This document shows, piece after piece, positions 6,110-46,292 of a stretch of 64,000 bases of DNA; position 1 is the first letter of the stretch; each line of letters opens with the position of its first letter. The DNA is from Macrostomum lignano (lineage: Eukaryota), in assembly GCA_002269645.1 (NCBI GenBank), contig NIVC01000763.1:62001-126000 (forward strand), read 5' to 3'. The notes beneath the pieces were generated by a model, which ran no database searches, had not been told where the DNA came from, and saw only the letters and a list, made by a program, of their open reading frames with translations. The position numbers were made by a program, and so were the translations under genes.

Positions 6110-9100
6110 CTGCATTTATTTTTACATGACACCCTTCATGTCTGACATGACGCTTCTTTTATTCTACCATGATGCTTCTTGATTTTTTAAATGACACTTT
6201 CATTAGTTTTTAAATGAGGCTCCTATGATTTTTTCATGACGCTTCTATGATTTTTACATGACGCTTCTACGATTTTTTACATGACGCTTCTATGATTTTT
6301 TTAATGACGCTTCTATGATTTTTACATGACGCTTCTGTGATTTTTTACATGACGCTTCTATGTTTTTTTACATGACGCTTCTATGATTGTTTACACGACG
6401 CTTCTATAATTTTTTACATTACGCTTCTATGATTGTTTACATGACGCTTCTTTTGATTTTTACATGACGCTTCGATAATTTTTTACATGACGCTTCTTTT
6501 GATTTTTACATGACGCTTCTATGATTTTTATATGACGCTTCTACGATTTTTTACATGACGCTTCTATGATTTTTTACATGACGCTTCTATGATTTTTTTA
6601 ATGACGCTTCTATGATTTTTAAATGACGCTTCTACGATTTTTTACGTGACGCTTCTATGATTGTTTACATGACGCTTCTATGATTGTTTACATGACGCTT
6701 CTATGTTTTTTTACATGACGCTTCTATGATTGTTTACACGACGCTTCTATGATTTTTTACATGACGCTTCTATGATTGTTTACATGACGCTTCTTTTGAA
6801 TTTTACATGACGCTTCTTTTATTCTTCCATGACGCTTCTATAATTGTTTACACGACGCTTCTATGACTTTTTACGTGACGCTTCTATGATTGTTTACATG
6901 ACGCTTCTTTTGATTTTTACATGACGCTTCTTTTATTCTTCCATGACGCTTCTATGATTTCTTAAATGACACTTCCATTAGTTTTTATATAAGGCTTCTA
7001 TGATTTTTTACATGACGCTTCTATGATTGTTTACATGACGCTTCTATGATTTTTTACATGACGCTTATATGATTTTTTACATGACGCTTCGATAATTTTT
7101 TACATGACGCTTCTATGATTGTTTACATGACGCTTCTTTGATTCTCTACATGACGCTTCTATGATTTTTTACATGACGCTTCTATGACTTTTTACATGAC
7201 GCTTCTATGATTTTTTACATGAAGCTTTTATGATTGTTTACATGACGCTTCTATGATTGCTTACATGACGCTTCTATGATTTTTACATGACGCTTCTATG
7301 ATTGTTTACATGACGCTTCTATGATTTTTTACATGACGCTTCCATGATTTTTTACATGACGCTTTTATGGTTGCTTACATGACGCTTCTATGATTTTTAC
7401 ATGACGCTTCTACGATTTTTTACATGACGCTTCTCTTATTTTTTACATGACGCTTCTATGATATTTTAAATGACGCTTCTATGATTTTTACATGACGCTT
7501 CTATAATTTTTTACATGGCGCTTCTATGATTGTTTACACGACGCTTCTATGACTTTTTACATGACGCTTCTATGATTGTTCACATGACGCTTCTTTTGAT
7601 TTTTACATGACGCTTCTTTTATTCTTTCATGACGCTTCTATGATTTCTTAAATGACACTTCATTAGTTTTTATATAAGGCTTCTATGATTGTTTACATGA
7701 CGCTTCTATGATTTTTTACAGGACGCTTCTATGATTTTTTACATGACGCTTCGATAATTTTTTACATGACGCTTCTATAATTGTTTACACGACGCTTCTA
7801 TGACTTTTTACGTGACGCTTCTATGATTGTTTACATGACGCTTCTTTTGATTTTTACATGACGCTTCTTTTATTCTTCCATGACGCTTCTATGATTTCTT
7901 AAATGACACTTCCATTAGTTTTTATATAAGGCTTCTATGATTTTTTACATGACGCTTCTATGATTGTTTACATGACGCTTCTATGATTTTTTACATGACG
8001 CTTATATGATTTTTTACATGACGCTTCGATAATTTTTTACATGACGCTTCTATGATTGTTTACATGACGCTTCTTTGATTCTCTACATGACGCTTCTATG
8101 ATTTTTTACATGACGCTTCTATGACTTTTTACATGACGCTTCTATGATTTTTTACATGAAGCTTTTATGATTGTTTACATGACGCTTCTATGATTGCTTA
8201 CATGACGCTTCTATGATTTTTACATGACGCTTCTATGATTGTTTACATGACGCTTCTATGATTTTTTACATGACGCTTCCATGATTTTTTACATGACGCT
8301 TTTATGGTTGCTTACATGACGCTTCTATGATTTTTACATGACGCTTCTACGATTTTTTACATGACGCTTCTCTTATTTTTTACATGACGCTTCTATGATA
8401 TTTTAAATGACGCTTCTATGATTTTTACATGACGCTTCTATAATTTTTTACATGGCGCTTCTATGATTGTTTACACGACGCTTCTATGACTTTTTACATG
8501 ACGCTTCTATGATTGTTCACATGACGCTTCTTTTGATTTTTACATGACGCTTCTTTTATTCTTCCATGACGCTTCTATGATTTCTTAAATGACACTTCAT
8601 TAGTTTTTATATAAGGCTTCTATGATTGTTTACATGACGCTTCTATGATTTTTTACAGGACGCTTCTATGATTTTTTACATGACGCTTCGATAATTTTTT
8701 ACATGACGCTTCTATAATTGTTTACACGACGCTTCTATGACTTTTTACGTGACGCTTCTATGATTGTTTACATGACGCTTCTTTTGATTTTTACATGACG
8801 CTTCTTTTATTCTTCCATGACGCTTCTATGATTTCTTAAATGACACTTCCATTAGTTTTTATATAAGGCTTCTATGATTTTTTACATGACGCTTCTATGA
8901 TTGTTTACATGACGCTTCTATGATTTTTTACATGACGCTTATATGATTTTTTACATGACGCTTCGATAATTTTTTACATGACGCTTCTATGATTGTTTAC
9001 ATGACGCTTCTTTGATTCTCTTTATGACGCTTCTATGATTTTTTACATGACGCTTCTATGACTTTTTACATGACGCTTCTATGATTTTTTACATGAAGCT

Positions 9101-10220
9101 TTTATGATTGTTTACATGACGCTTCTATGATTGCTTACATGACGCTTCTATGATTTTTACATGACGCTTCTATGATTGTTTACATGACGCTTCTATGATT
9201 TTTTACATGACGCTTCCATGATTTTTTACATGACGCTATTATGGTTGCTTACATGACGCTTCTATGATTTTTACATGACGCTTCTACGATTTTTTACATG
9301 ACGCTTCTCTTATTTTTTACATGACGCTTCTATGATATTTTAAATGACGCTTCTATGATTTTTACATGACGCTTCTATAATTTTTTACATGGCGCTTCTA
9401 TGATTGTTTACACGACGCTTCTATGACTTTTTACATGACGCTTCTATGATTGTTCACATGACGCTTCTTTTGATTTTTACATGACGCTTCTTTTATTCTT
9501 CCATGACGCTTCTATGATTTCTTAAATGACACTTCTATTAGTTTTTATATAAGGCTTCTATGATTTTTTACATGACGCTTCTATGATTGTTTACATGACG
9601 CTTCTATGATTTTTTACAGGACGCTTCTATGATTTTTTACATGATGCTTCAATAATTTCTACATGACGCTTCTATAATTGTTTACATGACGCTTCTTTGA
9701 TTCTCTACATGACGCTTCTATGATTTTTTACATGACGCTTCTATGATTGTTTTTAATGACGCTTCTATGATTTTTTACATGACGCTTCTACGATTTTTTA
9801 CATGACGCTTCTGCGATTTTTTACACGACGCTTCTATGATTGTTTACATGACGCTTCTATGATTTTTACATGACGCTTCTATGATTGTTTACATGACGCT
9901 TCTACGATTTTTTTTACATGACGCTTCTATGATTTTTACATGACGCTTCTATGATTTTTTAAATGACGCTTCTTTGATTTTTTACATGACGCTTCTATGA
10001 TTTTTTAAATGACGCTTCTATGATTTTTACACGACGCTTCTATGATTTTTACATGACGCTTCTACGATTTTTTACATGACGCTTCTATGATTTTTACATG
10101 ACGCTTCTATGATTGTTCACATGACGCTTCTATGATTTTTACATGACGCTTCTATGATTGTTTACATGACGCTTCTACGATTTTTTACATGACGCTTCTA
10201 TGATTTTTACAGGACGCTTC
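6110..10220. repeat. 22-24-bp satellite (ACATGACGCTTCTATGATTTTTT) with a 937-bp higher-order repeat
   Basis: Roughly 180 tandem units. The variant marker AAATGACACTT falls at 6964, 7650, 7901, 8587, 8838 and 9524 (alternating 686/251-bp spacing). Confidence 0.95.
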
Positions 10221-10284
10221 TTTTTAAAAAGTCTTTTAGTTTTCCAGACGTTGAAAAGCTTTAATCAAAAAAATTATACTCTAT

Positions 10285-11520: not shown

Positions 11521-11619
11521 CCAGACAATAAGTAGCTAGAGCGACAATTTCCTTAGCTTTATAGTGGCTCCTTTAAATTGGCATGGCGCTTTATACCTTT
11601 ACATTTGAAATTGTATATC

Positions 11620-13800
11620 TTGAATGTTTGACATGGTGGCTCTTTTATGTTTGACATAGTGGCTCTTCTATGTTTGACATGGTGGCTCTTCTATGTTTGA
11701 CATGGTGGCTCTTTTATGTTTGACATGGTGGCTCTTTTATGTTTGACATGGTGGCTCTTTTATGTTTGACATGGTGGCTCTTTTATGTTTGACATGGTGG
11801 CTCTTTTATGTTTGACATAGTGGCTCTTCTATGTTTGACATGGTGGCTTTTTTATGTTTGACATAGTGGCTCTTCTATGTTTGACATGGTGGCTTTTTTA
11901 GGTTTGACATGGTGGCTCTTTTATGTTTGACATGTTGGCTTTTTAATGTTCGACATGTTGGCTTTTTAATGTTCGACATGGTGGCTCTTTAATGTTCGAC
12001 ATGGTGGCTTTTTAATGTTCGACATGGTGGCTCTTTTAGGTTTGAAATGGTGGCTCCTTAATTTTCGAAATGGTGGCTCTTTTATGTTCGACATGGTGGC
12101 TCTTTAATGTTCGACATGGTGGCTCTTTAATGTTCTTAATGGTGTCTGTTTTATGTTTGACATGGTGGCTCTTTATTGTTCGACATGGTGGCTCTTTAAT
12201 TTTTAACATGGTAACTCTTTTATGTTTGATATGGTGGCTCTTTTATGTTCGACATGGTGGCTCTTTAATGTTCGACATGGTGGCTCTTTAATGTTTGATA
12301 AGGTGGCTCTTTAATGTTCGACATGGTGGCTTTTTAATGTTTGACATGGTGGCTCTTTAATGTTCTTAATGGTGGCTCTTTAATGTTTGACATGGTGGCT
12401 TTTTAATTTTTGAAATGGTGGCTGTTTTATGTTCGACATGGTGGCTCTTTAATTTTTAACATGGTGACTCTTTTATGTTCGATATGGTGGCTCTTTTATG
12501 TTTGACATAGTGGCTCCTTTAGGTTTGAAATGGTGGCTCTTAAATGTTTAACATTGTGGCTCTTTAATTTTCGAAATGGTGGCTCCTTAATTTTCGAAAT
12601 GGTGGCTCTTTTATGTTTGACATGGTGGCTCTTTAATGTTCGACATGGTGGCTCTTTAATGTTCGACATGGTGGCTCTTTAATGTTCTTAATGGTGTCTG
12701 TTTTATGTTCGACATGGTGGCTCTTTAATGTTCGACATGGTGGCTCCTTTAGGTTTGAAATGGTGGCTCTTTAATGTTTGACATTGTGGCTCTTTAATAT
12801 TTGACAAGGTGGCTCTTTAATGTTCGACATGGTGGCTCCTTAATTTTCGAAATGGTGGCTCCTTAATTTTCGAAATGGTGGCTGTTTTATGTTTGACATG
12901 GTGGCTCTTTAATGTTCGACATGGTGGCTCTTTAATGTTCGACATGGTGGCTCTTTAATGTTCTTAATAGTGTCTGTTTTATGTTCGACATGGTGCCTCT
13001 TTAATTTTTAACATAGTAACTCTTTTACATGTATGTTTGATATGGTGGCTCTTTTATGTTTCACATGGTGGCTCTTTAATGTTCGACATGGTGGCTCCTT
13101 TAGGTTTGAAATTTTGGCTCTTTAATGTTTGACATTGTGGCTCTTTAATGTTTGACATGGTGGCTTTTTAATGTTCGACATGGTGGCTCTTTTAGCTTTG
13201 AAACGGTGGCTCTTTAATGTTTGACATGGTGACTCTTTAATGTTTGACATGGTGGCTCTTGTATGTTCGACATGGTGGCTCCTTTAGGTTTGAAATGGTG
13301 GCTCTTTAATGTTTGACATTGTGGCTTTTTAATGTTTGACATGGTGGCTTCTTAATGTTTGACATGGTGGCTCTTTTAGGTTTGAAATGGTGGCTCTTTA
13401 ATATTTGACATGGTGGCTCTTTAATGTTTGACATGGTGGCTCTTTTAGATTTGAAATGGTGGGTCTTTAATGCTTGACAGTGTGGCTCTTTAATGTTTGA
13501 CATGGCTGCTCTTTAATGTTCGATATGGTGGCTCTTTAATGTTTGACATGGTAACTCTTTTATGTTTGATATGGTGGCTCTTTTATGTTCAACATGGTGG
13601 CTCTTTAATGTTTGACATGGTGGCTTTTGAATGTTCGACATGGTGGCTCTTTAATGTTTGACATGGTGGCTCTTTTAGGTTTGAAATGGTGGCTCTTTAA
13701 TGTTCGACATGGTAGCTCTTTAATGTTCGACATGGTAGCTCTTTTATGTTTGACATGGTAACTCTTTTATGTTCGATATGTTGGCTCTTCTATGTTTGAC
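11620..13800. repeat. 23-bp minisatellite (GACATGGTGGCTCTTTTATGTTT)
   Basis: About 95 tandem units with ATGGTGGCT conserved. Confidence 0.95.
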
Positions 13801-13870
13801 ATTGCGCTTCTTTGATGTTTAGCAGTTTTGTTGTGTTTTTAAGGTGTTTTAATAAAAAAAATCTTTTTGC

Positions 13871-21450: not shown

Positions 21451-21534
21451 CACTGAAATTATATTCAGTGTTAAACGTATTAAAAGTTGATATAATAGAG
21501 CCCCAAGCTCTATCGCAGCCATTAGTTTACGTAC

Positions 21535-22556
<1,022 letters not shown>

Positions 22557-28827: not shown

Positions 28828-31800
28828 ATGGCAATGCAATGGATTCCATTGGAATCAAATCCTGAGGTAGGCTTAATTGCTATTGAATTATAATTTTCAT
28901 TATTTTTTTAAATTAGGAATTTAGGAAAATGTTCCACTTTTTCAATAGGCATATTATTCAATAGCCTGTTGGCCACATAGGCCTATCCCCTAAGCCTATG
29001 GGGTAGCAAGTAAATTTGCCAAAAGTTGATTCACCAAAAGTCAATTCACCAAGGCAAAAGCAAGTTGTTTCATTGAAAATTGTTTTGCTAAATAAATAAA
29101 TAACAAACAAATAAATAAAATGAACAAATATTGAAATATATTAATACAGAGATGAAATGTTAAGTGCTAACAGTGCTGGGCGTTAACTAGTTAATTGTTT
29201 AACTAGTTAATTAACTAGTTAAATTTTTTTAAAAATCGTTAAATTTTCGTTAAATTTTTTATGTATTAACTAGTTAACAAAAATCGTTAATTTTTTTCTG
29301 TATGTTAAAGTTAAATGACAAAAGTTAATAATTCCGGGAAATGGAGTTCCCCGGGTTCAAAATCCGCGGGTTTCAACAGCTTGTATGCCATTAAAAAGTA
29401 AAATTAATACATACATAAAATAACTTCGCCTTTCTAAGCATTATTTAATGCGTCACAAACTATTACATGTATATATTTCAGTTAGGGCCTACAAGTTATA
29501 ATGTATAGAATATTCCGGAAGATTCTGGAATCTTCAACTATTATCTATTGATATTCTACCCAAGGACTACTAGAAGTTATCGTTGTACATAGGGATGTCG
29601 TCGATTCCCCGGGGAATTTTCTTATTGGGGACCCGGGGAATTTACTGTCATTCCCCAGGGACCCCGTGGACCCCGGGGAAAAAATAAGTAAAAAATGGCG
29701 AATAACTTAGAATCTTTATAAGTCACTAAGTGGCATTTTTTTAACTTTGATTAAAGCTTTGGATGGACTACATGTTCAAGGCGCAAGGGTAAAAACTTTA
29801 AGCAATGTTTGTTTAATTCTGGTAGAACAGCACGCTTGATAATGAGAAGTAAAAGAAAGGAGATTGCGAGCATTTTCATTAGAACGACATGTTTCGCCTA
29901 ACTTTAGGCATCATCGGGCGGGTTGGAATTTATTTAATTTAAGTCAAAACGTAGAGTATAAATACATTTCAGTGGCAGATAGTCAGTGATGCACAAGATT
30001 GTAATAACAAAACACGGGGGGAGTCAACAGATCAAAACCGAGACAGACAGAGAAAACGTAGAGTATAAATACATTTCAGTGGCAGATAGTCAGTGATGCA
30101 CAAGATTGTAATAACAAAACACGGGGGGAGTCAACAGATTGTTACAGTAACAGTAACACTGTAACAATACAGTAACAGATTGTTATTACAATCTTGTGCA
30201 TCACTGACTATCTGCCACTGAAATGTATTTATACTCTACGTTTTGACTTAAATTAAATAAATTCCAATCTGCCCGATGATGCCTAAAGTTAGGCGAAACA
30301 TGTCGTTCTAATGAAAATGCTCGCAATCTCCTTTCTTTTAATGTTTGTTTAAAACTGTATTTGACAACATGGCATCACCAAATCGTGTGCGCACCTTTAT
30401 CAGAAAGGGTCCAGACTCCGGAGGCGGAAAATGCATACTCAGCAGCTGCACTCGTGGGAGGATAATTAATGAATGAGACTGTTTTTATAACCGAAATTTT
30501 AATTTCTTGCAGATACATGTAAATCACCATTTTGTCTTGTCTAATACGGAGTATTTTGTTATTGTATGACACCCCCCTATGCATCAGTGACTGACGCAGG
30601 ATATGGCGCTGTGCCTGCGTCAAATGTGTCAAGCCGTCAACGCAGACCAACACAATAGTCAGTAAGGCTTCTTTTTCCTGACGGGTTTCTACGCTCGTAC
30701 GTTCAATTTGCTTGATTGAAAGACTCATAGTGAAAAAAACATTCAAACGGGTCGCTAATTTCATAAGACCGAAATTTCACAACGCCGAAAATTCTGCATG
30801 CAATACAATCCTTATTGTAAAGTTTTTCTACGATGTGAAATTTCAGTCTTACGAGTATGAAGTTTCGGTCTTGTGAAGTATGGTGTTTCGGCGTTGTGAA
30901 ATTTTGGTCTTATGAACCCCCCCCCCCATTCAAATGTGTGTTGTGTTTGAAATAATACATTGAAATAAGCAGTTTTGCGGTAAAAAAAGCATAGACAGAG
31001 TTTCAATCAGCTTTCTGTGAATGATTTTCTTATTTAAATGGCAAAAATTTAGTTAAAAATGCTTTTTTTCTCCCCGGGGTCCCCGGTCTAATGCCCAGGG
31101 GAGTATTCCCCGACAAGCTCCCCAGGGCGCCGCGACCTGGCCACAGCCGCGCCGCGCCGACCTGAAATTTAAAAAACACGCCGAACACATGTCCGGGAAA
31201 ATGTCACTTTTTCCATTAGGGAATTATTAACTTTAACTTTTAACTTTTCAGAAGTTAAATTTTGGGCAAAAGTTAAATAATTAACTAGTTATAGTTAATT
31301 TTTTTGGAGCAATTAAATTAACTTTTTAACTTTTAACGAGTTAAAAAAATTGATTAACTTGCCCAGCACTGAGTGCTAAAATATGAAATGTTTAAATAGG
31401 CCTAAGGAAAAATTTAGAATGTTGAATATTGAATATTAAAATATAGATGTTAAGATTTTTCCAAGACCCCATCCATGTCTCGCACCATGTTGAGGTGGCT
31501 ACAAGCCAGGTTGTGGATGGTATGCATGTACGCCGGAACTTTTCCCGCGTACAAAACGGCCATCCTAAGTCCTTGGCGTACACAATCGGCGTACACAACC
31601 CCTGGCGCACTTTGTTGGCGTACACTATTGGCGTACACAAGTAACACAGCCACGCATACTTTTTTGGCGTACAAATTTTGGTGAATAAATTCATGCCGTG
31701 CATGGAAATTGTAATGTAAATTAATGTTTTTACGTAAAGTAAAGGAAAATTTATATCGTCAGTGATAAACTTTTTGCTTATTTTAAGTTAAAAAAAATAA

Positions 31801-34580
31801 AATTTGTGTAAAATTTTGCTGAAAGTAATAATTTTGCATAATATTTTTTGTAGGTATTATTTAAGTTTGTTTAAATTGAAAATATTCGTAATATTTTAAA
31901 GACACTTTTCATACCAAAGCCTTTCCTAGAAAACTCTACTCGTGAAAACCGAATGACCTTTTTTTAGGAATTTTTGGTGTACATTTTAGTGCAACTTTTT
32001 GTTTTTGGCGTACACTGGCGTACAAAGTCCTTGACGCCCGAATTTTTTCTGGCGTACACGGGTACATGATCTGCACACTGGGCTACAAGTATGCAAAAGC
32101 TACTGTGTAGTTTGACTGCCAGCCTAGCACTCAGCTCGGTTGAGAATCTATTGCGCCAGGCAGTGGCACTTAGCAGGTCAACTTTTAGGCTGGTAGTTGT
32201 GGTATTCGTGCCTTTTTTTTGCACTGGTTGCCTTCTTGTTATGCAGTTGCCTTGCATCTTCTTACAGAGTATTACCAATAGGTGATTGACTGTCCAGTGC
32301 TCAACACCTGGTAATTGGATTCCACAAATGCATACATTCCATCAACAACAAGGATGTCCTTTCCTCGCTTCAATCCTCCTTCGAAAATTTCAAATTCTGG
32401 TATGGCTAATGATGATTGTCTTTCTGGGGGATTGCATCGCAAAGTAATACAATGTTGTCAACTGCGTCATTGAAGTCAGCATCCAGAGCTTCTGCTGCCA
32501 AGTCATTATTGAAGTCATCAGCTCCAGCTTTTGCTGCCAAGTCCTTGTTGAAGTCATCAATGTCAACTCCAGCTGCAGCTGGAGCTTCTACCACCAAGTC
32601 CTCATTGAAGTAATCGGTGTCAACTCCAGTTGCAGCTGGAGCTTCTGCTACCAAGTCGTTGTTGAAGCCATTGTCCAACATGGATTGCAAAATAACTGGA
32701 TAGTCTCCTATCCTTATGTTAGGTGTCAATGGTGGCCAAATGCATATCCTTCTCTTCTTGCTAGGTGGGTGTTGTAATGGGCTTTAGCTAAAGTATCCCT
32801 GGCTAGTGTTATTGTCTTGGTCTTGATCTCAACCACAAGAGTGGCAGTTTGGAGGCCTATACTGCTGAGCAAGCTGGTAATCAATTACTACTGTTATTAT
32901 TATATTAAAACAGTAAATATAACTTCAAACAAATTCTGAATCTTTAAAACCAGGTGCTAAACAAATATGCTCATAATCTTGGCCTGCCATCCAACTGGAA
33001 CTTCATTGATGTGTTCTCACTGGACTCAGATGTGCTCGCTATGGTGCCCCAGCCAGTTGCTGGCCTGGTTTTTATTTATCCAATCACGCCCGAGTCCGAG
33101 GCTGAACCATTTGGAGAGCAGCTGGAGAAGTCGGACGATGTGTACTTTATGAAGCAGACTGTTAGCAATGCCTGCGGCACTGTGGCCATGCTGCACACCA
33201 TTGGCAATAGCTTGGAAAAATTGAAGCTAAAAGGTAGAAAATCCTTTTCTTTATTTAATGCAAAATAGAAAGTTTTCAAGCGGCAATTGTTTATCAACTA
33301 ATCTTCTTTTGCAGAGGGTTCCTCTCTGTTGAATTTCTTCAACAAGTCCTCGGGTGCGAGCTGCACACCGGAGACCCGGGCCAAGCTCATGGCCGAGGAC
33401 GAGGTGAGTTGCGGCGTAGATTGAGAAGTTGCGGGAAATAATTTGACGATATCACGCTTATCCATTGAGAATTGCCCTCAATACCCGAGGAGTATCGCCC
33501 TTAATCCCAAAAGAAAATCGCCCTCAATTCCCATAGAGAATCGCCTTTTATCTTCATAAAGAATCGCCCTCAATCCCCATAAAGAGTCACCCTCAATCCC
33601 CATAGAGAATCGCCCTCAATCTATACAGAATCGCACTCAGTCCATAGAGAATCGCCCTCAGTCCATAGAGAATCACGCTCAGCCCACTGAGAATCACCCT
33701 CAGCCCATTAAGAATCACTCTCAGCCCATTGAGAATCACCCTCAGCCCATTGAGAATCGCCCTCAGTCCATAGAGAGTCGCCCTCAATCCATAGAGAATC
33801 GCCCTCAGCCCATAGAGAATCGTCCTCCGCCCATAGAGAATCGCCCTCAGCCCATAGAAAATCGCTCTCAGCCCATAGAGAATCGCCCTCATAATTCATA
33901 GAGAATCGCCCTCATAATCCATAGAGAATCGCCCTCATAATCCATAGAGAATCGCCCTCATAATCCATAGAGAATCGCCCTCATAATCCATAGAGAATCG
34001 CCCTCAGCCCATAGAGAATCCCCTCAGGCCATAGAGAATCCCCTCAGCCCATAGAGAATCCCCTCAGGCCATAGAGAATCCCCTCAGCCCATAGAGAATC
34101 CCCTCATCCAAAGAGAATCACCTTCAGCCCATAGAGAATCCCCTCAGGCCATAGAGAATCCCCTCAGGCCATAGAGAATCCCCTCAGGCCATAGAGAATC
34201 CCCTCAGGCCATAGAGAATCCCCTCAGCCCATAGAGAATCCCCTCATCCAAAGAGAATCACCTTCAGCCCATAGAGAATCGCCCACCCTCTGCAGACGCT
34301 GACCTCGGCCCACGAGGAGGCGGCAGGCGAGGGCCAGACGGAGACCCCCAGCCGGGACACTTGCACCAATCTGCACTTTGTGGCCCTGCTTCACCGCTCC
34401 GGCCAGCTGTGGGAAATGGACGGCAGACGGAACGGCCCCATCTGTCACGGGGCCACCACCGAAGACCAATTCCTTCTTGACAGCGCCAAAGTTATGCAAA
34501 AGTACATCGACCGGCAGGGAAAAGACGACGTTCATTTTAGCGTCATCGCCCTGGCGGAAGGAGAATCAATGTTTTCTTAA
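28828..34580 (+). CDS. UCHL3: Ubiquitin C-terminal hydrolase, UCH-L1/L3 family (peptidase C12), 230 aa; exons 28828-28866, 32954-33233, 33315-33403, 34296-34580
   Basis: MAMQWIPLESNPE|VLNKY; catalytic Gln/Cys in MKQTVSNACGT; His in NLHFVAL; Asp in WEMDGR. All junctions are GT-AG and in frame (693 nt). L1 versus L3 orthology is not resolved. Confidence 0.93.
29333..29383 (+). mobile_element. Solo 3' terminus of Helitron family B
   Basis: TTCCCCGGGTTCAAAATCCGCGGGTTTCAACAGCTTG|T, identical to the ends at 50019 and 52969. Confidence 0.8.
29886..29917 (-). ncRNA. Minimal type-I hammerhead ribozyme-like motif (variant core)
   Basis: Reverse complement is CCGATGA-T-GCCTAAAGTTAGGC-GAAA-CATG-TC. Confidence 0.55.
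30273..30304 (+). ncRNA. Minimal type-I hammerhead ribozyme-like motif (variant core)
   Basis: CCGAUGA (canonical CUGAUGA), stem II GCCUAA/UUAGGC, GAAA, palindromic stem III ACAUGU, putative GUC cleavage triplet. Stem I is weak. Confidence 0.55.
30760..30916. mobile_element. Small fold-back MITE
   Basis: TTCATAAGACCGAAATTTCACAACGCCGAAA versus TTTCGGCGTTGTGAAATTTTGGTCTTATGAA (31-bp inverted repeat, 1 mismatch). Confidence 0.65.
31527..32066. mobile_element. MITE-like element with multiple GCGTACAC motifs in inverted arms
   Basis: Repeated GGCGTACAC/A motifs in both arms around an AT-rich centre; termini approximate. Confidence 0.45.
32070..32900 (-). pseudogene. Decayed FLYWCH zinc-finger-containing ORF, probably a Mutator-type transposase relic
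   Basis: Minus strand AIPEFEIFEGGLKRGKDILVVDGMYAFVESNYQVLSTGQSITYW*YSVRRCKATA*QEGNQ..HNYQP resembles FLYWCH spacing, with stops and frameshifts. It is preceded by an acidic linker (ORF 32406-32729). Confidence 0.5.
33470..34285. repeat. 21-bp minisatellite (GAGAATCGCCCTCAGCCCATA) filling UCH intron 3
   Basis: Tandem units running up to the acceptor at 34294-34295. Confidence 0.95.
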
Positions 34581-34759: not shown

Positions 34760-35775
34760 ACGGAATTGCCCACAGACCAGTTGAGAAATCGCCCTCAGAC
34801 ACCGCTTGTGAAATCGCCCTCAGACACCAGTTGAGAAATCGCCCTCAGACACCAGTTGAGAAATCGCCCTCAGACACCAGTTGAGAAATCGCCCTCAGAC
34901 ACCAGTTGAGAAATCGCCCTCAGACACCGCTTGTGAAATCGCCCTCAGACACCAGTTGAGAAATCGCCCTCAGACACCAGTTGAGAAATCGCCCTCAGAC
35001 ACCAGTTGAGAAATCGCCCTCAGACACCAGTTGAGAAATCGCCCACAGACACCAGTTGAGAAATCGCCCTCAGACACCAGTTGAGAAATCGCCCTCAGAC
35101 ACCAGTTGAGAAATTGCCCACAGACACCAGTTGAGAAATCGCCCTCAGACACCAGTTGAGAAATCGCCCACAGACACCAGTTGAGAAATCGCCCTCAGAC
35201 ACCAGTTGAGAAATCGCCCTCAGACACCAGTTGAGAAATCGCCCACAGACACCCGTTGAGAAATCGCCCTCAGACACCAGTTGAGAAATCGCCCACAGAC
35301 ACCCGTTGAGAAATCGCCCTCAGACACCAGTTGAGAAATCGCCCTCAGACACCAGTTGAGAAATTGCCCACAGACACCAGTTGAGAAATCGCCCTCAGAC
35401 ACCAGTTGAGAAATCGCCCACAGACACCAGTTGAGAAATCGCCCACAGACACCAGTTGAGAAATCGCCCTCAGACACCAGTTGAGAAATCGCCCTCAGAC
35501 ACCAGTTGAGAAATCGCCCACAGACACCCGTTGAGAAATCGCCCTCAGACACCAGTGTAGAAATCGCCCTCAGACACCAGTTGAGAAATCGCCCTCAGAC
35601 ACCAGTTGAGAAATCGCCCACAGACACCACTTGAGAAATCGCCCTCAGACACCAGTTGAGAAATCGCTCACAGACACCAGTTGAGAAATCGCCCACAGAC
35701 ACCAGTTGAGAAATCGCCCTCAGACACCAGTGTAGAAATCGCCCTCAGACCGCTTGAGAAATCGCCCTCAGACAC
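34760..35775. repeat. 25-bp minisatellite (ACCAGTTGAGAAATCGCCCTCAGAC) x~40
   Basis: Near-perfect tandem units. Confidence 0.97.
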
Positions 35776-36149
35776 CTGTCTCATTTCAAGGCTTCCTATT
35801 AAAAAGGCCTCTTTAAAACTTGAAATCTTTTCTTTAAATCAATTTCTTTTTTCATTCGCCAATATAATCCAGACATGCCCTTTCAAGTGCTGCTGCAACA
35901 ATTGGAGCTGACTAAATAATGCATTAGTCTAACGATATCTGTCATATATTGAAATTCTATTCTTTGTGTTGTGACCGCTCTACAATTGCCAGTTTGAAAT
36001 ATATATACAAGCTTTAAATTAATGTTCTTTTGCTGAGAACTATCGCTATTCATTCATTTGCTTCTTTTTAAAAGAACATATTTCTTGGACAATTGAGATT
36101 ATTTTTATTTGATGCCAAGCTTGATAAGTAACGTCTGCATGACCTATTT

Positions 36150-37790: not shown

Positions 37791-37989
37791 ACACGAGTCG
37801 ATTCTAAGTCATAACCGATTACCGGTTCTATCAATTTGGTCTTCTGTTCATGCAGTTTATTAGACACATTCACGACAGCCAAACGGTTAAACAATCTTCA
37901 TACCTGTAGTCAGCGATGCTTTTGGTATTTAATATTCAAAACGTGAATTTGCAGCAGTAACTACCTGCACTCTATTCAGCTGTTATGAA

Positions 37990-39121
37990 ATGGCGCAATC
38001 CGACAACGAACCAATTGTAATTGTGATTGACAGCCAGCCTGCTGATGATAATGAAGATCAGCTTATTAAGGCTGCGGCTTCGGGTCAACGCTCAGTGAAG
38101 TCGTGTAGCTGCCAGATCGACCATAGACGGTTCTGCGATCAGCTGATGGACGCACTTGACTATTCGGATGAAGAGTGCCAGATGGAAGATGCTGTTGATG
38201 GTGGAGGTGCTTGCGAAGCTGCTGCCTGTGATGAGGCAGCTGATGCGATCGATCAGCCCATAGAGATGCCAGGTATCAGATGGGTTGGGGAAGCGGGGAG
38301 TAGATTTGGGAATAGGGATCTTGGCCGCTAACCCCGTCAAGGGGCCGTCGCCCCCTCTTTCCCAAGACCCTGCAGCCGCTGTCGAGTCCGAGCTGATTCC
38401 TCTGGCCGACGCCCTCGCCCAGCTGCCGTCCTGGCCCGACCTGCCCGACCAGCGCCTGACCGCCGCCATCCTGCCATCGCTCGGTCGGGCGTTTTTCGAC
38501 TGTCGCCGCCACTCGCTGCCGCTTGACCGCCGCACCTCCGAGCTGCTCAGCGGCCTGGCTGCCGCTCGGCCCATCTGCCTCGCCGCCGGCCTCCTGCCCG
38601 CGGCGGCCGCCTCCGCTGCCGACGTGTGTCGCGTCAGCGTCGTCGGCGCCAGCGGCAACTGCGGAGCGGCCGCCGCGCTCCTCTGCGACCTGGCCACCGC
38701 GGCTGGCGCCATGCCGCAGCTGCTCGCCGCCCTGTGCCGCCAGCCGCCGCCGATGACCATCAACGACTTTGCCAGCTTTGAAGCCGGCTGGCTTCGACTG
38801 CTGCTCGCCTGTCTGGAAGGCGCCGAAGATGAGACGCCGACGCCGCGTCTTAGCGAGGATCTTCACCGTCTGCTAGTCGACCTGCGGCCTCGGTACGGTG
38901 CTGACGAACGGCTTCGACGAAGCGTCCCGCTGGCCAGGGCGCTGATGTCGCTGGCTGTCCAGCCGCGCTGGCTGCGTCTGCTCGACTCCCCGGCCAAGCG
39001 GCTGCTGCTGGCCGAGTTTTTGACCGAGAATTGCAGCCTGCTGCGCCGGAAGCTGGCCGGACTGCCGGCCAAGCTGCTGCCGGATGGAGGCGGCGCTGAG
39101 CTGACTGGGGTGAAGGTTTGA
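37990..39121 (+). CDS. Uncharacterised protein; predicted exons 37990-38272 and 38376-~39118 (may continue via further exons)
   Basis: Acidic first exon ending CCA G|GTATCA; phase-1 acceptor after a pyrimidine tract (CCCTGCAG|CC). GC-rich coding-like second exon encoding Leu/Ala-rich, helical-looking sequence. No family recognised. Confidence 0.6.
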
Positions 39122-40262: not shown

Positions 40263-41726
40263 TTAAGGTATGGACAGCTGCAGCAGTGACGACAGCTTTG
40301 ATGAAGGCATCGCGTTTGACTGCCTCAGCAGCAAATCCAGCGTCACTTCAGCCTCACTCTTCGGAGCGTTCGAATCCGTCTTTGTAAGTTGAACGTTCAG
40401 CTGGCGTCGGTAGCGTGCCTGAGCAGATGCTGCAGGGTTTGAAGCTTTTGCAACAAGTCTGCTTCCATGCCCTCTGCCCCTGCTCCTGCTTCTCCTGCTG
40501 GAGTGACAGCGGCAACGACAGCAGTATCTGCGACGACTTCTCCGACAAGTACCACGACGTTTCTCCTTGAAATCTTCTCTGGGTGGCGATCTCGATCTCC
40601 GGAATTCGTCCTCTAAAGTTCTTCCACGAGTTGCTGTTCTAGTTAGAGGCGTTGCATGCTTGCTGCGTCCGTCTTTTGATTTCATTGCCTCGCTAGATCC
40701 GCTGTCTATAGACATGGAGCTGGTGCGGTTGTTGCTGCTGGATCTGGAAGCCGGAGACTGACGTGATCTGTCTCTGGAGTACGTTTTGTCACCTGACGGT
40801 GGTGATAATCTGTCTCGAAATCTGATTGATCTCTCCATGGATCTATCTGTGGATGATGTTGAACTATCGCGACAACTATCCCTGTATGATGATGCTCTTT
40901 CATAAGATGTGTCACGGGTTCTGTCACTAGATGCTGACCATCTTTTTCTATATGTATCCCTAGATGACGATCTGTCGCAAGATGTGCTCGTACATCTTGA
41001 CTGCTCACGGGTTCGTTCTCGGGAGTGCAGATGTCTGCTTGATTGCAATCTTTTGAGGAAGCGTCTCCTCCGAACTGACGTTCGGTTCGTTGACCTTGAC
41101 GATTCGCTTGTTGATCCAGAATATTTGCCGCTGAAGCTGTTTTTAGAACTCGATCTGTGACTGAGAGTCTGGCTGTCTCCGCTAAAGCTGTCTTTGGAGA
41201 CCGATGGGGTTCTTCGAAATCTGCGTCGATGCCCAGCGTGAACACTTCGATCCGATGATCTTCCGGTCGACCTGCTTCGAGACTTTTTGCGACGCACAAC
41301 GCTACCTCGGGCGTGATCTCGCGATCCTTCCGAATCGCTTGATAGACTGCTCGAACTTTGCTGCGAGTAATCGTCGTTGCTTTGGCAGGGCTGCTTTTTC
41401 ATTTCGATACTTTTTGGATGTACTGCTGCCAGTGCAGACTTGCTTTGCTGGCTGACTCTGTTTGAGCTGCTCTGAGGAGAATATTTGACTTCAGAGCATT
41501 GACTAGTAGCTGCGCTGTTGCTGTCTGATCGGGAAGCTGCGGTCCCGACGGCTAGCTCGGTATAGTTAGAGCAGTTTTTGGAAGTAGTTGCTTCAAGCTT
41601 TATTGGTTGCTCGAACAGAGTTAAATCCTCTGTTGCAGCTCTAGCAGTGCTAAGTTTGTTAAAGACTACACCGCGATCAAGTAATCCTTTGTCAGCTGCC
41701 GCCTTCCATTGATCAAGAGCTGCCAT
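40263..41726 (-). CDS. Arg/Ser-rich low-complexity ORF, 487 aa, function unknown
   Basis: Long uninterrupted, non-tandem ORF in an AT-rich setting, with an RS/SR-rich central region. Start, splicing and origin (host or TE) are unresolved. Confidence 0.5.
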   Translation of the reverse strand: MAALDQWKAAADKGLLDRGVVFNKLSTARAATEDLTLFEQPIKLEATTSKNCSNYTELAVGTAASRSDSNSAATSQCSEVKYSPQSSSNRVSQQSKSALAAVHPKSIEMKKQPCQSNDDYSQQSSSSLSSDSEGSRDHARGSVVRRKKSRSRSTGRSSDRSVHAGHRRRFRRTPSVSKDSFSGDSQTLSHRSSSKNSFSGKYSGSTSESSRSTNRTSVRRRRFLKRLQSSRHLHSRERTREQSRCTSTSCDRSSSRDTYRKRWSASSDRTRDTSYERASSYRDSCRDSSTSSTDRSMERSIRFRDRLSPPSGDKTYSRDRSRQSPASRSSSNNRTSSMSIDSGSSEAMKSKDGRSKHATPLTRTATRGRTLEDEFRRSRSPPREDFKEKRRGTCRRSRRRYCCRCRCHSSRRSRSRGRGHGSRLVAKASNPAASAQARYRRQLNVQLTKTDSNAPKSEAEVTLDLLLRQSNAMPSSKLSSLLQLSIP

Positions 41727-44576: not shown

Positions 44577-46292
44577 CAGTGGTACACAATAAATTAAGAC
44601 CAAACCAACTAACACAAATTTGAACTTTTAACTTTATAACCTATACAGATTGCGGGAGCATGTTGATCTAATCAGATATAGATAACCAAGGTATCAATCA
44701 ATTAAATCAGTGATGTGTTGGGTCACTACACGCAATTGAGTATACTTAATTGGAGTCCCTTGTCTCACTTTCGAATTTGATAAGTCACACAATTATAAGA
44801 CCATTTAATTAATTGGGCTATAAGGTGCTACAAAAGTGTCCCCGCTAATTCTAAAAGTCTAAAACATCTAATTAAATACTATTCTAAGCAAAAAGTTATC
44901 TCGAACTCTTCAAAAATAGGAAAAGGCAGAGCTCCATTGCCTGATTCATGTAGGAAAATCAAGGCCCTGTTTGACCAAGGAGTTTCCAAGTATGCCATAG
45001 CCATGCAGCTAAGAAAGTAAAAAATGTCTGCCTAGCAAGCCTTCAAGCCCCTTAGTAGCACTGGCAGCATAGGTTGTACCCCAAGACTTAGCAGGGCACT
45101 GAAAACTAACCTCCAACTGGATTGCCACATTGTGCGAATGCCCAAGTCCAACCATTGGCTCATTGCTATGGACATCAGCCATGAACTTTGGTATCTAGTG
45201 GTGTTCAGCTGCACCCCATGACTGTCTGCCAATGGTAGCTGTTGGTCTACATGGCCACATTGCTAGGAAGAGGCCATTTATCTCCAACAAGAACTAGAAG
45301 TGGCATTTGAACTGGGCAAAGCAGCATGCAAGCTGGACACCTCAGGACTAGGCCAAGACCATCAGGAGTGACGAGAGCAAATTTTTCTGCACTGGTTCTG
45401 ATGGCTGCTAGTATGTGCACCACTGAGCTGATGAGGAATTTGATCCCAGATGCACTGTTGGTACCATGAAGCATGGAGGTAACAATGTCATAGTATGGGC
45501 TATGTTCTCCAGAGCTAGACCTAGGCCAATAACTTGTATTGAAGGCATCATGGACAGTCAGAAGTACTGTGACATCCTTAGCAGCCACCTACCAAAGGCA
45601 GCAGATGCGCCGCTAGTGAGTCTAGTACACAGCTGGCAGTTTCAGCTAGACAACAATCCAAAGCACACCTTCAAGGTTTTGAAGGTATGGCTTGCTAATA
45701 ACAACATCCACACCATAGACTAGCTAGCACATTCACCAGACCTCAATCCGATTGAGAATCTGTGGAACTAGGTCAAGTGGGACATCTAGAGGCAGCAACC
45801 AGCTTCTATTGGTCAGCTATACTGTGTCATTAAAGACTCGTGGGCTTCTATCGCAGAAGAAGTGTGCCAGGAGCTAGTGGACAGTATGCCTAGGCAGTGC
45901 AATGCTGTGATTTAGTCAAAAAGACATGCTACAAAGTATTAGAGTAGATAGTTTGGTATTAGTAATGTAGTGATGTTTGCTTTATTTATTTCCCTAGTAT
46001 TTATCTATGGTCTTATTTCAATGTTAAACCTAAAACTTGTTGATCTATGTTGTCATTTTTTCTAGCAGACTTTTGATACTATCGATACCAACTAGCTGGC
46101 TTTGATTTAAAGAAGTTTTGAGCCTTTTGAACTTAAACCTGCTGGAAATTGAACAAAAATACCATACAAATAACAAAAATTAATATTCCTACAAGCTTCA
46201 CTTCCAATTTAGTACTTGAATTTAGCTTAAAGACCAGTATGGCAAAGATAAAATAATTTTACTTAGTAGTCTTAATTCATTGTATGCCATAG
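44577..46292 (+). mobile_element. Decayed Tc1-family transposon (DD34E), IR-DR type ends
   Basis: TA|CAGTGGTACACAATAAATTAAGAC left end and degenerate GTCTTAATTCATTGTATGCCATAG|TA right end. Transposase remnants RSDESKF, QLDNNPKHT and HSPDLNPIENLW carry stops and frameshifts. Confidence 0.88.

What the first reader, a model, noticed from the sequence alone, without database searches (positions are those of the whole stretch)
29852..30339. Inverted pair of minimal hammerhead-ribozyme motifs (CCGAUGA core variant) inside a host intron
Seen: identical 32-nt motifs on both strands with stem II GCCUAA/UUAGGC, GAAA, palindromic ACAUGU and GUC, in the arms of a ~160-bp inverted repeat. Established: Penelope-like pseudo-LTRs carry minimal type-I hammerheads with palindromic stem III that act as dimers, and inverted pLTR arrangements occur. 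Inference: the UCH pre-mRNA contains one sense motif and can fold a long dsRNA hairpin. The U4-to-C change, extra U after A9 and weak stem I may inactivate it or define a variant class.
Basis: partly seen in the sequence, partly recalled or inferred. Interest (0 to 1): 0.7.

Follow-up and report, generated by a model that had tools for sequence, protein, structure and literature searches.

The report
Dead Penelope retrotransposon remnant in intron
A 0.5-kb insertion in the first intron of a ubiquitin hydrolase gene is two short, back-to-back end fragments of a Penelope-like retrotransposon, each with that family's miniature hammerhead ribozyme motif; the motif carries a probably disabling base change, so this is an ordinary transposon relic.

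Summary
An identical 32-nt motif, CCGAUGA-U-GCCUAA-AG-UUAGGC-GAAA-CAUG-UC, lies at 30273-30304 (+) and 29886-29917 (-), inside 161-nt inverted arms that differ at 2 bases.

The element has the published anatomy of a Penelope-like element (PLE) insertion:
- two 5'-truncated copies joined head to head;
- a 13-bp target-site duplication (AATGTTTGTTTAA);
- a 33-nt "tail" on one arm only;
- a palindrome at the junction;
- the motif 36 nt from each 3' end.

It sits in intron 1 (28868-32953) of a UCH-L gene.

A metagenome scan that left position 4, helix I and helix II free returned more than 120 contigs carrying the same ribozyme architecture:
- 137 of 138 motifs have U4.
- All 167 motifs found with a looser descriptor have the "extra" base after A9, so that base is normal for the class.
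- Helices I and II covary.
- Neighbouring pairs are head to head 34:4.
- 8 of 13 pairs show an 11-14 bp duplication plus a 30-40 nt one-sided tail.

The window motif departs from the class only in U4-to-C and a 2-bp helix I. It is most likely inactive. No copies of its own family could be retrieved, so whether C4 is family-wide is untested. This is a new member of a known kind, of low interest.

The parts
29804..29816 (.). Left copy of the target-site duplication, AATGTTTGTTTAA
   Evidence: Exact 13-nt direct repeat of 30340-30352. In the 28-33 kb region this is the only place where a 13-mer abutting one end recurs at the matching offset.
29817..29849 (-). 33-nt 'tail': a 3' extension present on the left copy only (TTCTGGTAGAACAGCACGCTTGATAATGAGAAG on the + strand)
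   Evidence: It lies between the left duplication copy and the left arm and has no counterpart on the right. It matches the 30-40 bp one-sided tail of PLE insertions (PMC8557442, PMC3846280). Tails of 30-40 nt were measured in 8 metagenomic head-to-head pairs.
29850..30032 (-). Left pLTR-derived copy (sense on the minus strand); 29850-30010 pairs with the right arm
   Evidence: Inverted repeat I1, 161 nt, 99% complementary.
29886..29917 (-). Hammerhead-like motif of the left copy (CCGAUGA-U-helix II-GAAA-CAUG-UC); the predicted cleavage site is 36 nt from the arm end
   Evidence: The class covariance model gives 32.1 bits, E = 3e-8.
29946..30139 (.). Internal 107-nt tandem duplication, 1.8 copies: 87-nt block 29946-30032 = 30053-30139 (100% identical), separated by the 20-nt spacer CAAAACCGAGACAGACAGAG (30033-30052)
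30138..30168 (.). Palindrome at the head-to-head junction: ATTGTTACAGT / ACTGTAACAAT with a 9-nt loop, inside the GTAACA-rich centre 30140-30179. An 11-nt direct repeat ACAGATTGTTA lies at 30134-30144 and 30175-30185.
   Evidence: Junction palindromes are described for inverted PLE copies (PMC3846280).
30180..30340 (+). Right pLTR-derived copy (sense on the plus strand), 5'-truncated to 161 nt, without a tail
   Evidence: Base 30340 is shared with the first base of the right duplication copy.
30273..30304 (+). Hammerhead-like motif of the right copy, sense to the UCH pre-mRNA; the predicted cleavage site follows C30304, 36 nt from the arm end
   Evidence: The class covariance model gives 35.1 bits, E = 3e-9.
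30340..30352 (.). Right copy of the target-site duplication, AATGTTTGTTTAA
28868..32953 (+). Intron 1 of the UCH-L (ubiquitin C-terminal hydrolase L1/L3-like) gene, which hosts the insertion. Exon 1 is 28829-28867; exon 2 starts at 32954.
   Evidence: tblastn with human UCHL3 and the splice-site sequences.

Best explanation
[quoted passage not shown] It consists of two 5'-truncated copies of the element's 3' end (pLTR sequence), joined head to head and inserted together into intron 1 of a UCH-L gene.

Shown here:
- a 13-bp target-site duplication;
- a 33-nt tail on only one of the two 3' ends;
- a palindromic junction;
- in each copy, 36 nt from its 3' end, a motif with the architecture of the PLE minimal type-I hammerhead: unpaired base after A9, G10.1-C11.1, 6-bp helix II, GAAA, palindromic ACAUGU helix III and a GUC site.

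Inferred:
- The insertion was made by target-primed reverse transcription by a PLE RT/GIY-YIG enzyme supplied from elsewhere in the genome. Both arms were copied from one template, which explains why they share the same core change.
- The ribozyme is not functional at this locus. It has C instead of the conserved U4 of the CUGA turn, and only a 2-bp helix I. It also lacks a second sense copy to dimerise with. In any transcript spanning the element, the sense motif would be locked in a 161-bp duplex with the antisense arm.

The only likely activity is passive. The UCH pre-mRNA carries a long intronic hairpin that could be a substrate for dsRNA-processing enzymes.
For: Anatomy in the window:
- Inverted arms of 161 nt, 99% complementary.
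- TSD AATGTTTGTTTAA at 29804-16 and 30340-52, with a 33-nt tail on the left arm only.
- Junction palindrome.
- The motifs read outward, so the two copies are head to head.

Literature:
- PLE insertions form pLTRs, often with an adjacent inverted 5'-truncated copy. A 30-40 bp tail is often present at one end only, and hammerhead motifs lie in the pLTRs (PMC8557442).
- A 31-bp tail at the 3' end of one inverted pLTR, 8-10 bp TSDs, junction palindromes and a predominance of head-to-head arrangements are described in PMC3846280.
- PLE hammerheads have an unpaired base between 9 and 10.1, a long helix II, a short helix I and a palindromic helix III. They occur as dual motifs on opposite strands 100-700 bp apart (PMC4209133).

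Independent sequence evidence:
- The pattern CYGATGANG-N12-CGAAACATGTC found 138 motifs in 120 metagenome contigs; 137 have U4 and 1 has C4.
- Helices I and II were not specified by the pattern, yet they covary. 80.6% of cells are paired against at most 43% for slid controls, the covariation score is 0.575 against at most 0.197, and 0 of 500 shuffles reach the observed values.
- A covariance model built without the window sequences scores the window motifs 35.1 and 32.1 bits; the next best hit in the window scores 12 bits.
- In those contigs neighbouring motifs are -/+ (head to head) 34 times and +/- 4 times.
- 8 of 13 pairs have an 11-14 bp TSD with one copy 30-40 nt longer than the other. 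The window gives 13 bp, and 69 versus 35 nt.

Inactivity:
- All single and double mutants of the CUGA turn other than the C3-G8 swap had low activity in comprehensive mutagenesis (PMC9901934).
- Single PLE minimal hammerheads showed no detectable cleavage in vitro even with a canonical core (PMC4209133).
- The hairpin folds at -309.5 kcal/mol.
Against: - No RT or GIY-YIG coding sequence was found in the window or next to the metagenomic copies. The link from this motif class to PLE enzymes therefore rests on the literature and on the insertion anatomy, not on a linked ORF.
- No other copy of the window's own family was found in the window or in any searchable collection. It is not shown that the arm sequence is repetitive in its genome, that the tail is element sequence, or what base the family consensus has at position 4.
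- No empty site was available to prove the TSD.
- The metagenomic families share no sequence with the window outside the roughly 32-nt motif.
- The core and helix III columns of the class model are circular, because the search pattern was derived from the window motif.
- A 2-bp helix I is also reported for the active Drosophila virilis Penelope (PMC4209133), so a weak helix I alone does not prove decay.
Confidence: 0.8

Rival explanations
1. It is a miniature inverted-repeat or foldback DNA transposon with long terminal inverted repeats. The hammerhead-like string in its arms is a chance resemblance.
For: The element is small (491 bp) and has no coding capacity, with long near-perfect inverted arms. 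The arms begin TA...TA, so a TA duplication of the Tc1/mariner type cannot be excluded by eye. Tc1 and mariner transposase fragments exist elsewhere in the window. No copies or PLE ORFs were recovered.
Against: - The 13-bp direct repeat abuts the right arm but lies 33 nt outside the left arm. A cut-and-paste transposon does not produce that asymmetry, whereas it is typical of PLE insertions (PMC8557442).
- The motif matches the PLE class in features that were free in the search: the bulged U, the C2.1/G1.1 pair and a fully paired helix II. It scores 35 bits, against 12 bits for the best other site in 128 kb.
- About 0.04 relaxed-descriptor hits are expected per 64 kb, which scales to about 3e-4 in an element this size.
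- The same motif, position, orientation, TSD and tail combination recurs in unrelated families.
Confidence: 0.07
2. CCGAUGA defines a functional hammerhead variant. C4 is tolerated or compensated in this family, and the ribozyme still processes PLE transcripts, or has been co-opted in the UCH intron.
For: Both arms carry C4, while their only two differences lie just upstream of it. The template that transposed therefore already had C4. PLE hammerheads tolerate one other core change, the U3-A8 covariation (PMC4209133). Everything else in the motif is intact.
Against: - Only 1 of 138 motifs (pattern search) and 1 of 167 (relaxed descriptor) have C4, and that one sits inside a family that otherwise has U4.
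- Mutations in the CUGA turn gave low activity with no rescue by second mutations, except the C3/G8 swap (PMC9901934).
- Helix I has 2 bp, against a covarying helix of about 4 bp in the class.
- Both arms sharing C4 is expected if they were copied from one RNA. PLEs without canonical hammerheads still proliferate (PMC8557442), so transposition does not require an active ribozyme.
- At this locus the two motifs are on opposite strands, so no sense dimer can form.
Confidence: 0.05
3. The element is, or has become, a hairpin-RNA locus. The 161-bp intronic stem is processed into endo-siRNAs or miRNA-like RNAs, or is edited, and this function is what matters.
For: It forms a very stable hairpin, -309.5 kcal/mol with z = -33.8. 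It is transcribed as part of UCH intron 1 if the gene is expressed. Weak sub-threshold matches to miRNA precursor models appear. Small-RNA profiles that switch polarity across inverted PLE structures have been reported in rotifers (PMC3846280).
Against: - The Rfam matches are to plant miRNA families and fall far below their gathering scores (58.5 vs 211; 31.1 vs 64). They are what any long hairpin gives, and the metagenomic contig L051 gives similar matches.
- There is no conservation or expression evidence.
- This reading is a by-product of the PLE origin rather than an alternative to it.
Confidence: 0.05
4. It is a metazoan non-LTR retrozyme, a tandem hammerhead repeat that yields circular RNAs.
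For: It has a type-I hammerhead-like motif with a palindromic helix III, in a short non-coding repeat. Retrozymes have been proposed to derive from PLE pLTRs (bioRxiv 10.64898/2026.07.22.740005, abstract; PMC7229834, abstract).
Against: Retrozymes are direct head-to-tail repeats, so that two sense ribozymes can excise a unit. Here the two motifs are on opposite strands, and no direct second copy exists in the window. The TSD-plus-tail anatomy is that of a PLE insertion.
Confidence: 0.02

Closest known systems
Inverted (head-to-head) pseudo-LTR pairs of endonuclease-containing Penelope-like elements, as described for Penelope/Poseidon/Neptune-type PLEs and Adineta vaga Pen families (PMC8557442, PMC3846280)
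   Same: Two copies joined 5' to 5' with their 3' ends outward; a target-site duplication; a 30-40 nt tail at one end only; a palindrome at the junction; a hammerhead motif near the 3' end of each copy.
   Different: Both copies are truncated to under 350 nt, so there is no ORF, no direct pLTR and no internal sequence. The TSD of 13 bp is somewhat longer than the 8-10 bp quoted for A. vaga, though it lies within the 11-14 bp seen in the metagenomic pairs. There is an internal 107-nt tandem duplication in one copy.
Minimal type-I hammerhead ribozymes of metazoan PLEs (Cervera and de la Pena 2014, PMC4209133), the subclass with a small palindromic helix III reported in Drosophila, rotifers, shrimps and mosquitoes
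   Same: CNGAUGA box; unpaired base between A9 and G10.1; G10.1-C11.1; 6-bp helix II; GAAA; palindromic ACAUGU; GUC cleavage triplet; no loop-loop tertiary contacts; dual motifs on opposite strands a few hundred bp apart.
   Different: C instead of the conserved U at position 4, and a helix I of only 2 bp (C-G, G.U). Most class members found here have a covarying helix of about 4 bp.
HHR-bearing short repeat families in JGI metagenome contigs L001-L120 (host DNA of unidentified, probably arthropod, origin)
   Same: Identical core, bulge and helix III layout; the motif 57-95 nt from the copy end; head-to-head pairs with 11-14 bp TSDs and 30-40 nt one-sided tails.
   Different: No sequence similarity to the window outside the motif. 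They have a canonical U4 and different helix I and helix II sequences.
Metazoan non-LTR retrozymes (PMC7229834)
   Same: Short non-coding repeats carrying type-I hammerheads with a weak helix III that needs dimerisation.
   Different: Retrozymes are direct tandem repeats that give circular RNAs. This is an inverted pair with a TSD and a tail.

Membership tests
Penelope-like element insertion (pLTR-derived) | Hammerhead motif within the pLTR, near the 3' end, in the sense orientation of the element | tested here: met
   The motif lies 36 nt from each arm's outer end and reads outward. One core base deviates.
Penelope-like element insertion (pLTR-derived) | Adjacent inverted 5'-truncated copy, head to head | tested here: met
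   161-nt inverted arms with the sense strands diverging from the centre. The same -/+ order is seen in 34 of 38 opposite-strand neighbour pairs in related loci.
Penelope-like element insertion (pLTR-derived) | 30-40 bp extension (tail) present at only one end | tested here: met
   33 nt (29817-29849) lie between the left TSD copy and the left arm, with none on the right. That the tail is element-derived could not be checked without other family copies.
Penelope-like element insertion (pLTR-derived) | Target-site duplication flanking the whole unit | tested here: met
   A 13-bp exact repeat, AATGTTTGTTTAA. No empty site was available for confirmation.
Penelope-like element insertion (pLTR-derived) | Single ORF encoding a reverse transcriptase plus a GIY-YIG endonuclease | tested here: not met
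   No such ORF or motif exists in the window (ORF list; motif scan). The element is therefore not an autonomous PLE. It is filed only as a truncated, PLE-derived insertion.
Penelope-like element insertion (pLTR-derived) | Other copies of the same pLTR in the genome, some attached to a PLE ORF | not testable with these tools
   The host genome is not in the searchable collections. There were no hits in the window, the metagenome, the viral or the GTDB scans.
Hammerhead ribozyme (PLE minimal type I) | Conserved core C3 U4 G5 A6 N7 G8 A9 | tested here: not met
   The window has CCGAUGA, with C at position 4, in both copies. Related motifs have U4 in 137 of 138 cases.
Hammerhead ribozyme (PLE minimal type I) | G12 A13 A14, the A15.1-U16.1 pair, and H17 at the cleavage site | tested here: met
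   GAAA...U-C is present.
Hammerhead ribozyme (PLE minimal type I) | Helix II closed by G10.1-C11.1, 5-8 bp long | tested here: met
   GCCUAA/UUAGGC, with 6 of 6 pairs formed. Helix II covaries across the class.
Hammerhead ribozyme (PLE minimal type I) | Unpaired nucleotide between A9 and G10.1 | tested here: met
   A U is present. The bulge is found in 167 of 167 class motifs (PMC4209133).
Hammerhead ribozyme (PLE minimal type I) | Palindromic helix III / loop 3 that allows dimer formation | tested here: met
   ACAUGU, the same as in 157 of 167 class motifs.
Hammerhead ribozyme (PLE minimal type I) | Helix I of about 4-5 bp | tested here: not met
   Only C-G and G.U pairs form, followed by two mismatches, in both arms. 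A 2-bp helix I is, however, reported for D. virilis Penelope (PMC4209133).
Hammerhead ribozyme (PLE minimal type I) | Self-cleavage at the H17 site | not testable with these tools
   This needs in vitro transcription.
Hammerhead ribozyme (Rfam families) | Match to an Rfam hammerhead covariance model | tested here: inconclusive
   There was no hammerhead hit at gathering score or at E<=10. Canonical-core class members in L051, L053, L059 and L079 also gave none, so the models do not cover this minimal class.
MITE / TIR DNA transposon | Short TSD of fixed length directly abutting both terminal inverted repeats | tested here: not met
   The flanks GAGAAG|...|ATGTTT are not a direct repeat. Only a palindromic TA inside the arms is possible. 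The real 13-bp repeat is offset by 33 nt on one side.
Metazoan non-LTR retrozyme | Direct head-to-tail repeats, each with a sense hammerhead | tested here: not met
   The two motifs are on opposite strands, and there is no further copy in the window.

The most novel reading that the evidence does not exclude
The CCGAUGA core is not a dead copy but the fixed state of a whole PLE family in this host. Either the hammerhead tolerates C4 in the minimal, dimeric, bulge-containing context, or a PLE lineage proliferates with a catalytically silent hammerhead fold kept for another role, such as RT recognition of the 3' end. In addition, the intronic 161-bp hairpin may feed the host's small-RNA pathway against that family.
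Probability: 0.06. Interest if true: 0.55.

Novelty: new member of a known kind. Interest (0 to 1): 0.2.

Why it matters
By itself it matters little. It is one more truncated Penelope-like insertion with a decayed ribozyme motif. Such motifs number in the thousands in some animal genomes (about 2,000 to 9,000 reported; PMC4209133).

It has three modest uses:
- It is a clean, compact example of the full PLE insertion signature (head-to-head copies, TSD, one-sided tail, junction palindrome) in under 550 bp, which is handy for annotation pipelines that would otherwise call it a MITE or a miRNA-like hairpin.
- The metagenome survey gives unbiased numbers for this hammerhead subclass: U4 in 137 of 138 motifs, the bulge in 167 of 167, head-to-head 34:4, and TSDs of 11-14 bp with tails of 30-40 nt.
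- The insertion places a perfect 161-bp inverted repeat in a housekeeping-gene intron. That is a potential source of dsRNA and a possible hazard for assembly or replication.

Tried and rejected
1. Rfam at gathering score and at E<=10 gave no hammerhead hit. The only matches were sub-threshold plant and animal miRNA models driven by the hairpin. A control showed that Rfam also misses canonical members of this minimal class, so the result was discarded as uninformative.
2. A search for family copies in the window (blastn, word size 7) found none.
3. Exact family-specific patterns found nothing in viral contigs, metagenome contigs or GTDB genomes.
4. An attempt to identify the host, or to fetch an orthologous empty site through proteins, failed. 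The UCH exon found no homologue in the word-indexed collection, and two window ORFs are not on record. The ARF6-like gene could not be reconstructed because its last exon was not found.
5. A literature full-text search for the motif strings returned only primers.
6. RNAcofold of two sense copies gave an extended intermolecular duplex, not a hammerhead dimer. Minimum-free-energy folding cannot represent the core, so this was set aside. The isolated 71-nt monomer shows no unusual stability, z = 0.13.
7. A search for RT/GIY-YIG ORFs or motifs next to the metagenomic hammerheads found nothing convincing. One 649-aa ORF in L105 is unrelated in position. The apparent 'ORFs' containing QPTNAHIISHK are translations of the reverse complement of the pLTR itself.
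8. Upstream similarity among metagenomic copies extends only about 250-400 nt, so no full-length element could be assembled from them.
9. An 18-bp imperfect TSD (AATGTTTGTTTAAWWCTG) was considered. The 13-bp exact core is preferred, because two adjacent mismatches are unlikely in an element whose arms differ at only 2 of 161 positions.
Full report
OBSERVATION

The string CCGATGATGCCTAAAGTTAGGCGAAACATGTC occurs at 30273-30304 on the plus strand and at 29886-29917 on the minus strand. It occurs nowhere else in the window, even with 3 mismatches allowed, and none is expected by chance. The two copies sit in inverted arms 29850-30010 and 30180-30340, which are 161 nt long and 99% complementary. 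The only two differences are at 29920/29922 = 30270/30268, just 5' of the motif. As RNA the region folds into a single hairpin of -309.5 kcal/mol, z = -33.8.

A relaxed minimal-hammerhead descriptor finds only these two sites in the window, against 0.04 hits per dinucleotide shuffle. I wrote that descriptor after seeing the motif, so the number is only indicative.

GENE CONTEXT

A UCH-L1/L3-like gene lies on the plus strand.
- Exon 1 is 28829-28867 (ATGGCAATGCAATGGATTCCATTGGAATCAAATCCTGAG|gtaggc).
- Exon 2 begins at 32954 after aaccag.
- Further exons lie at about 33.3 kb and 34.3-34.6 kb.

The element is therefore inside intron 1 (28868-32953).

- A 13-nt exact direct repeat, AATGTTTGTTTAA, lies at 29804-29816 and 30340-30352. 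The right copy abuts the right arm. The left copy is separated from the left arm by 33 nt (29817-29849).
- Within 28-33 kb this is the only position where a 13-mer abutting one end recurs at the corresponding offset.
- Inside the element, an 87-nt block of the left copy is duplicated perfectly (29946-30032 = 30053-30139), with a 20-nt spacer between the two blocks.
- The 40-nt centre contains an 11-bp-stem palindrome, 30138-30148 / 30158-30168.
- Both motifs read outward, so the two copies are joined 5' to 5' with their 3' ends at the flanks.

COMPARISON WITH WHAT IS PUBLISHED ON PLEs

According to Craig et al. 2021 (PMC8557442):
- PLE insertions are heavily 5'-truncated.
- They often have an inverted 5'-truncated copy next to the pLTR.
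- They often have a 30-40 bp tail at one end only.
- Hammerhead motifs are typically located within the pLTRs.

Arkhipova et al. [quoted passage not shown]

Cervera and de la Pena 2014 (PMC4209133) define the PLE hammerheads by these features:
- a conserved G10.1-C11.1 pair;
- a long helix II (6-8 bp);
- a short helix I (4-5 bp; 2 bp in D. virilis);
- a palindromic helix III or loop 3.

They also note dual motifs on opposite strands 100-700 bp apart.

Every one of these features is present in the window element.

INDEPENDENT TEST WITH RELATED SEQUENCES

No copy of the window's own family could be found in the viral, metagenome or GTDB collections. I therefore used the last metagenome scan for a class-level pattern, CYGATGANG-N12-CGAAACATGTC. 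This pattern leaves four things free: position 4 (C or T), the bulged base, the inner helix II, and all of helix I.

The results were as follows.
- Position 4 is U in 137 motifs and C in 1. The single C4 copy (L091) belongs to a family whose other members have U4.
- On 96 distinct sequences, helix I and helix II form standard pairs in 80.6% of cells, against at most 43% when the 3' partners are slid. The covariation score is 0.575 against at most 0.197, and 0 of 500 shuffles reach the observed values. This is a real, structured hammerhead class.
- A covariance model built without the window sequences scores the two window motifs 35.1 and 32.1 bits (E about 3e-9 and 3e-8). The next best site in the window scores 12 bits. 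Class members score about 45-68 bits. The core and helix III columns are circular by construction. The bulge, the closing pair of helix I and the pairing of helix II are not.
- With the looser descriptor, 167 motifs were found in the contigs. All have the bulged base, 154 have a canonical CUGANGA core, and 157 have ACAUGU.
- Neighbouring motifs on opposite strands are ordered -/+ (head to head) 34 times and +/- 4 times, with spacings of 93-705 nt. The window pair is -/+ with a spacing of 387 nt.
- In the largest family, copies end either 61 nt after GUC or about 32 nt further on, with the extension TGAGGAAGATGCACGGTCAAACAACCCTCAA.
- In 8 of 13 head-to-head pairs the flanks share an 11-14 bp direct repeat, and one copy is 30-40 nt longer than the other. 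The window gives a 13-bp repeat, and 69 versus 35 nt past GUC.

The window element thus reproduces, feature by feature, an insertion signature that recurs in unrelated families carrying the same ribozyme class.

WHAT IS NOT SHOWN

- No RT or GIY-YIG coding sequence is linked, either in the window or in the contigs. Similarity among the metagenomic copies extends only about 250-400 nt upstream of the motif.
- The assignment to PLEs therefore rests on the literature link between this ribozyme class and PLEs, plus the insertion anatomy.
- Repetitiveness of the arm sequence in its own genome, the element origin of the tail, and the empty site could not be tested.

IS THE RIBOZYME ALIVE?

Probably not, for four reasons.
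1. U4 belongs to the CUGA uridine turn. In comprehensive single and double mutagenesis of a hammerhead, all changes in this turn gave low activity, and only the C3/G8 swap was rescued (PMC9901934). In the unbiased sample here, C4 occurs once in 138 motifs.
2. Helix I has two pairs (C-G and G.U) followed by mismatches in both arms. The class has a covarying helix of about 4 bp.
3. PLE minimal hammerheads with canonical cores show no detectable cleavage as single motifs, and only weak cleavage as dimers (PMC4209133). Here the two motifs are on opposite strands, so no transcript contains two sense copies.
4. Any transcript spanning the element would bury the sense motif in a 161-bp duplex.

That both arms carry C4 is expected if both were copied from one template during integration. 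It shows only that the template already had C4. This is compatible with the published view that PLE proliferation does not depend on a canonical hammerhead (PMC8557442).

Whether C4 is fixed in the family remains open. I give that reading about 5%.

RIVALS

- A MITE or foldback element with a chance motif is unlikely. The duplication is offset by 33 nt on one side, and the motif agrees with the class in features that were not searched for.
- A retrozyme is excluded by the inverted rather than direct arrangement.
- A hairpin-RNA function is possible only as a by-product. The sub-threshold Rfam miRNA matches are what any long hairpin gives, and contig L051 produces similar ones.
- Rfam's silence on hammerheads carries no weight, because canonical members of the class are also missed.

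VERDICT

This is a solo, head-to-head pair of 5'-truncated Penelope-like pLTR copies in UCH-L intron 1. It has a 13-bp TSD and a 33-nt tail, and it carries a PLE-class minimal hammerhead motif that is most likely inactivated (U4C, weak helix I). It is a new member of a known kind.

The A9 bulge is normal for the class, and the 'variant class' idea has no support.

Noticed in passing
window 29181-29700 and 31040-31350: The PLE fragment appears nested in the remains of an older inverted-repeat element. TTAACTAGTTAA-rich and CCCCGGGG-containing segments on the left (29181-29300, 29600-29690) have inverted counterparts on the right (31062-31086, 31271-31351). Examples are I7 (25 nt, 88%) and I9 (21 nt, 95%).
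   Followed up: partly
window 30734-30942: A cluster of short inverted and direct repeats built on TCATAAGACCGAAATTTCACAACGCCGAAAA (I3, I4, I12, D3), about 400 bp to the right of the element. It looks like another small foldback or MITE-like repeat.
   Followed up: no
window 59947-62968; also 6145-10221, 11618-13820, 34776-35776, 33461-34284: The window is unusually rich in long minisatellites with 18-48 nt periods. The largest are 72 copies of a 42-nt unit at 98% identity and 178 copies of a 23-nt unit. There are also long degenerate AG/GA tracts at 26.3-27.4 kb and 49.3-52.7 kb. The 42-nt unit contains CACTGATGAAGG, which gives weak hits (9-12 bits) to the hammerhead class model that are not meaningful.
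   Followed up: partly
window 21530-22556 (-): Two exons of an ARF6-like small GTPase ([28 protein letters not shown]... and [18 protein letters not shown]...). The expected last exon, coding for roughly the last 45 residues, was not found in the window by tblastn or motif search. The gene may be truncated, or its last exon may be diverged.
   Followed up: partly
window 53259-53651 (-) and 45427-45720 (+): Fragments of a mariner-like transposase (...WDREGILLIEWLPEGRTINA...) and of a Tc1-like transposase (...GTMKHGGNNVIVWAMFS...). DNA transposons of the TA-duplicating kind therefore do exist in this genome.
   Followed up: no
window 58333-58698 (+); 37933-39118 (+); 40263-41726 (-): An exon of a glutamine-fructose-6-phosphate aminotransferase-like gene (...[11 protein letters not shown]...). 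Also a GC-rich block (46-51% GC at 36-42 kb) with long overlapping ORFs on both strands, and a 487-aa Ser/Arg-rich ORF. None was characterised further.
   Followed up: no
L104 (whole contig); L064 and L073: L104 is a perfect palindrome around a head-to-head hammerhead pair (its two 2837-nt halves are 100% identical in reverse complement), which is probably an assembly artefact of the inverted structure. L064 and L073 carry the same insertion locus at 100% identity from two different metagenomes.
   Followed up: no
L001-L120 generally: In 481 kb from 100 of these contigs, the class model finds 239 hammerhead motifs, about one per 2 kb. This is an extreme density of short hammerhead-bearing repeats in whatever host genome contaminates these samples.
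   Followed up: partly
window 29955-29975, 30062-30082 and the complementary site in the right arm: Each pLTR copy contains TATAAATA followed about 4 nt later by TTCAGTG (an arthropod-type initiator-like TCAGT). The sequence reads antisense to the hammerhead. Bidirectional TATA and initiator-like motifs in pLTRs were noted for rotifer PLEs (PMC3846280).
   Followed up: no
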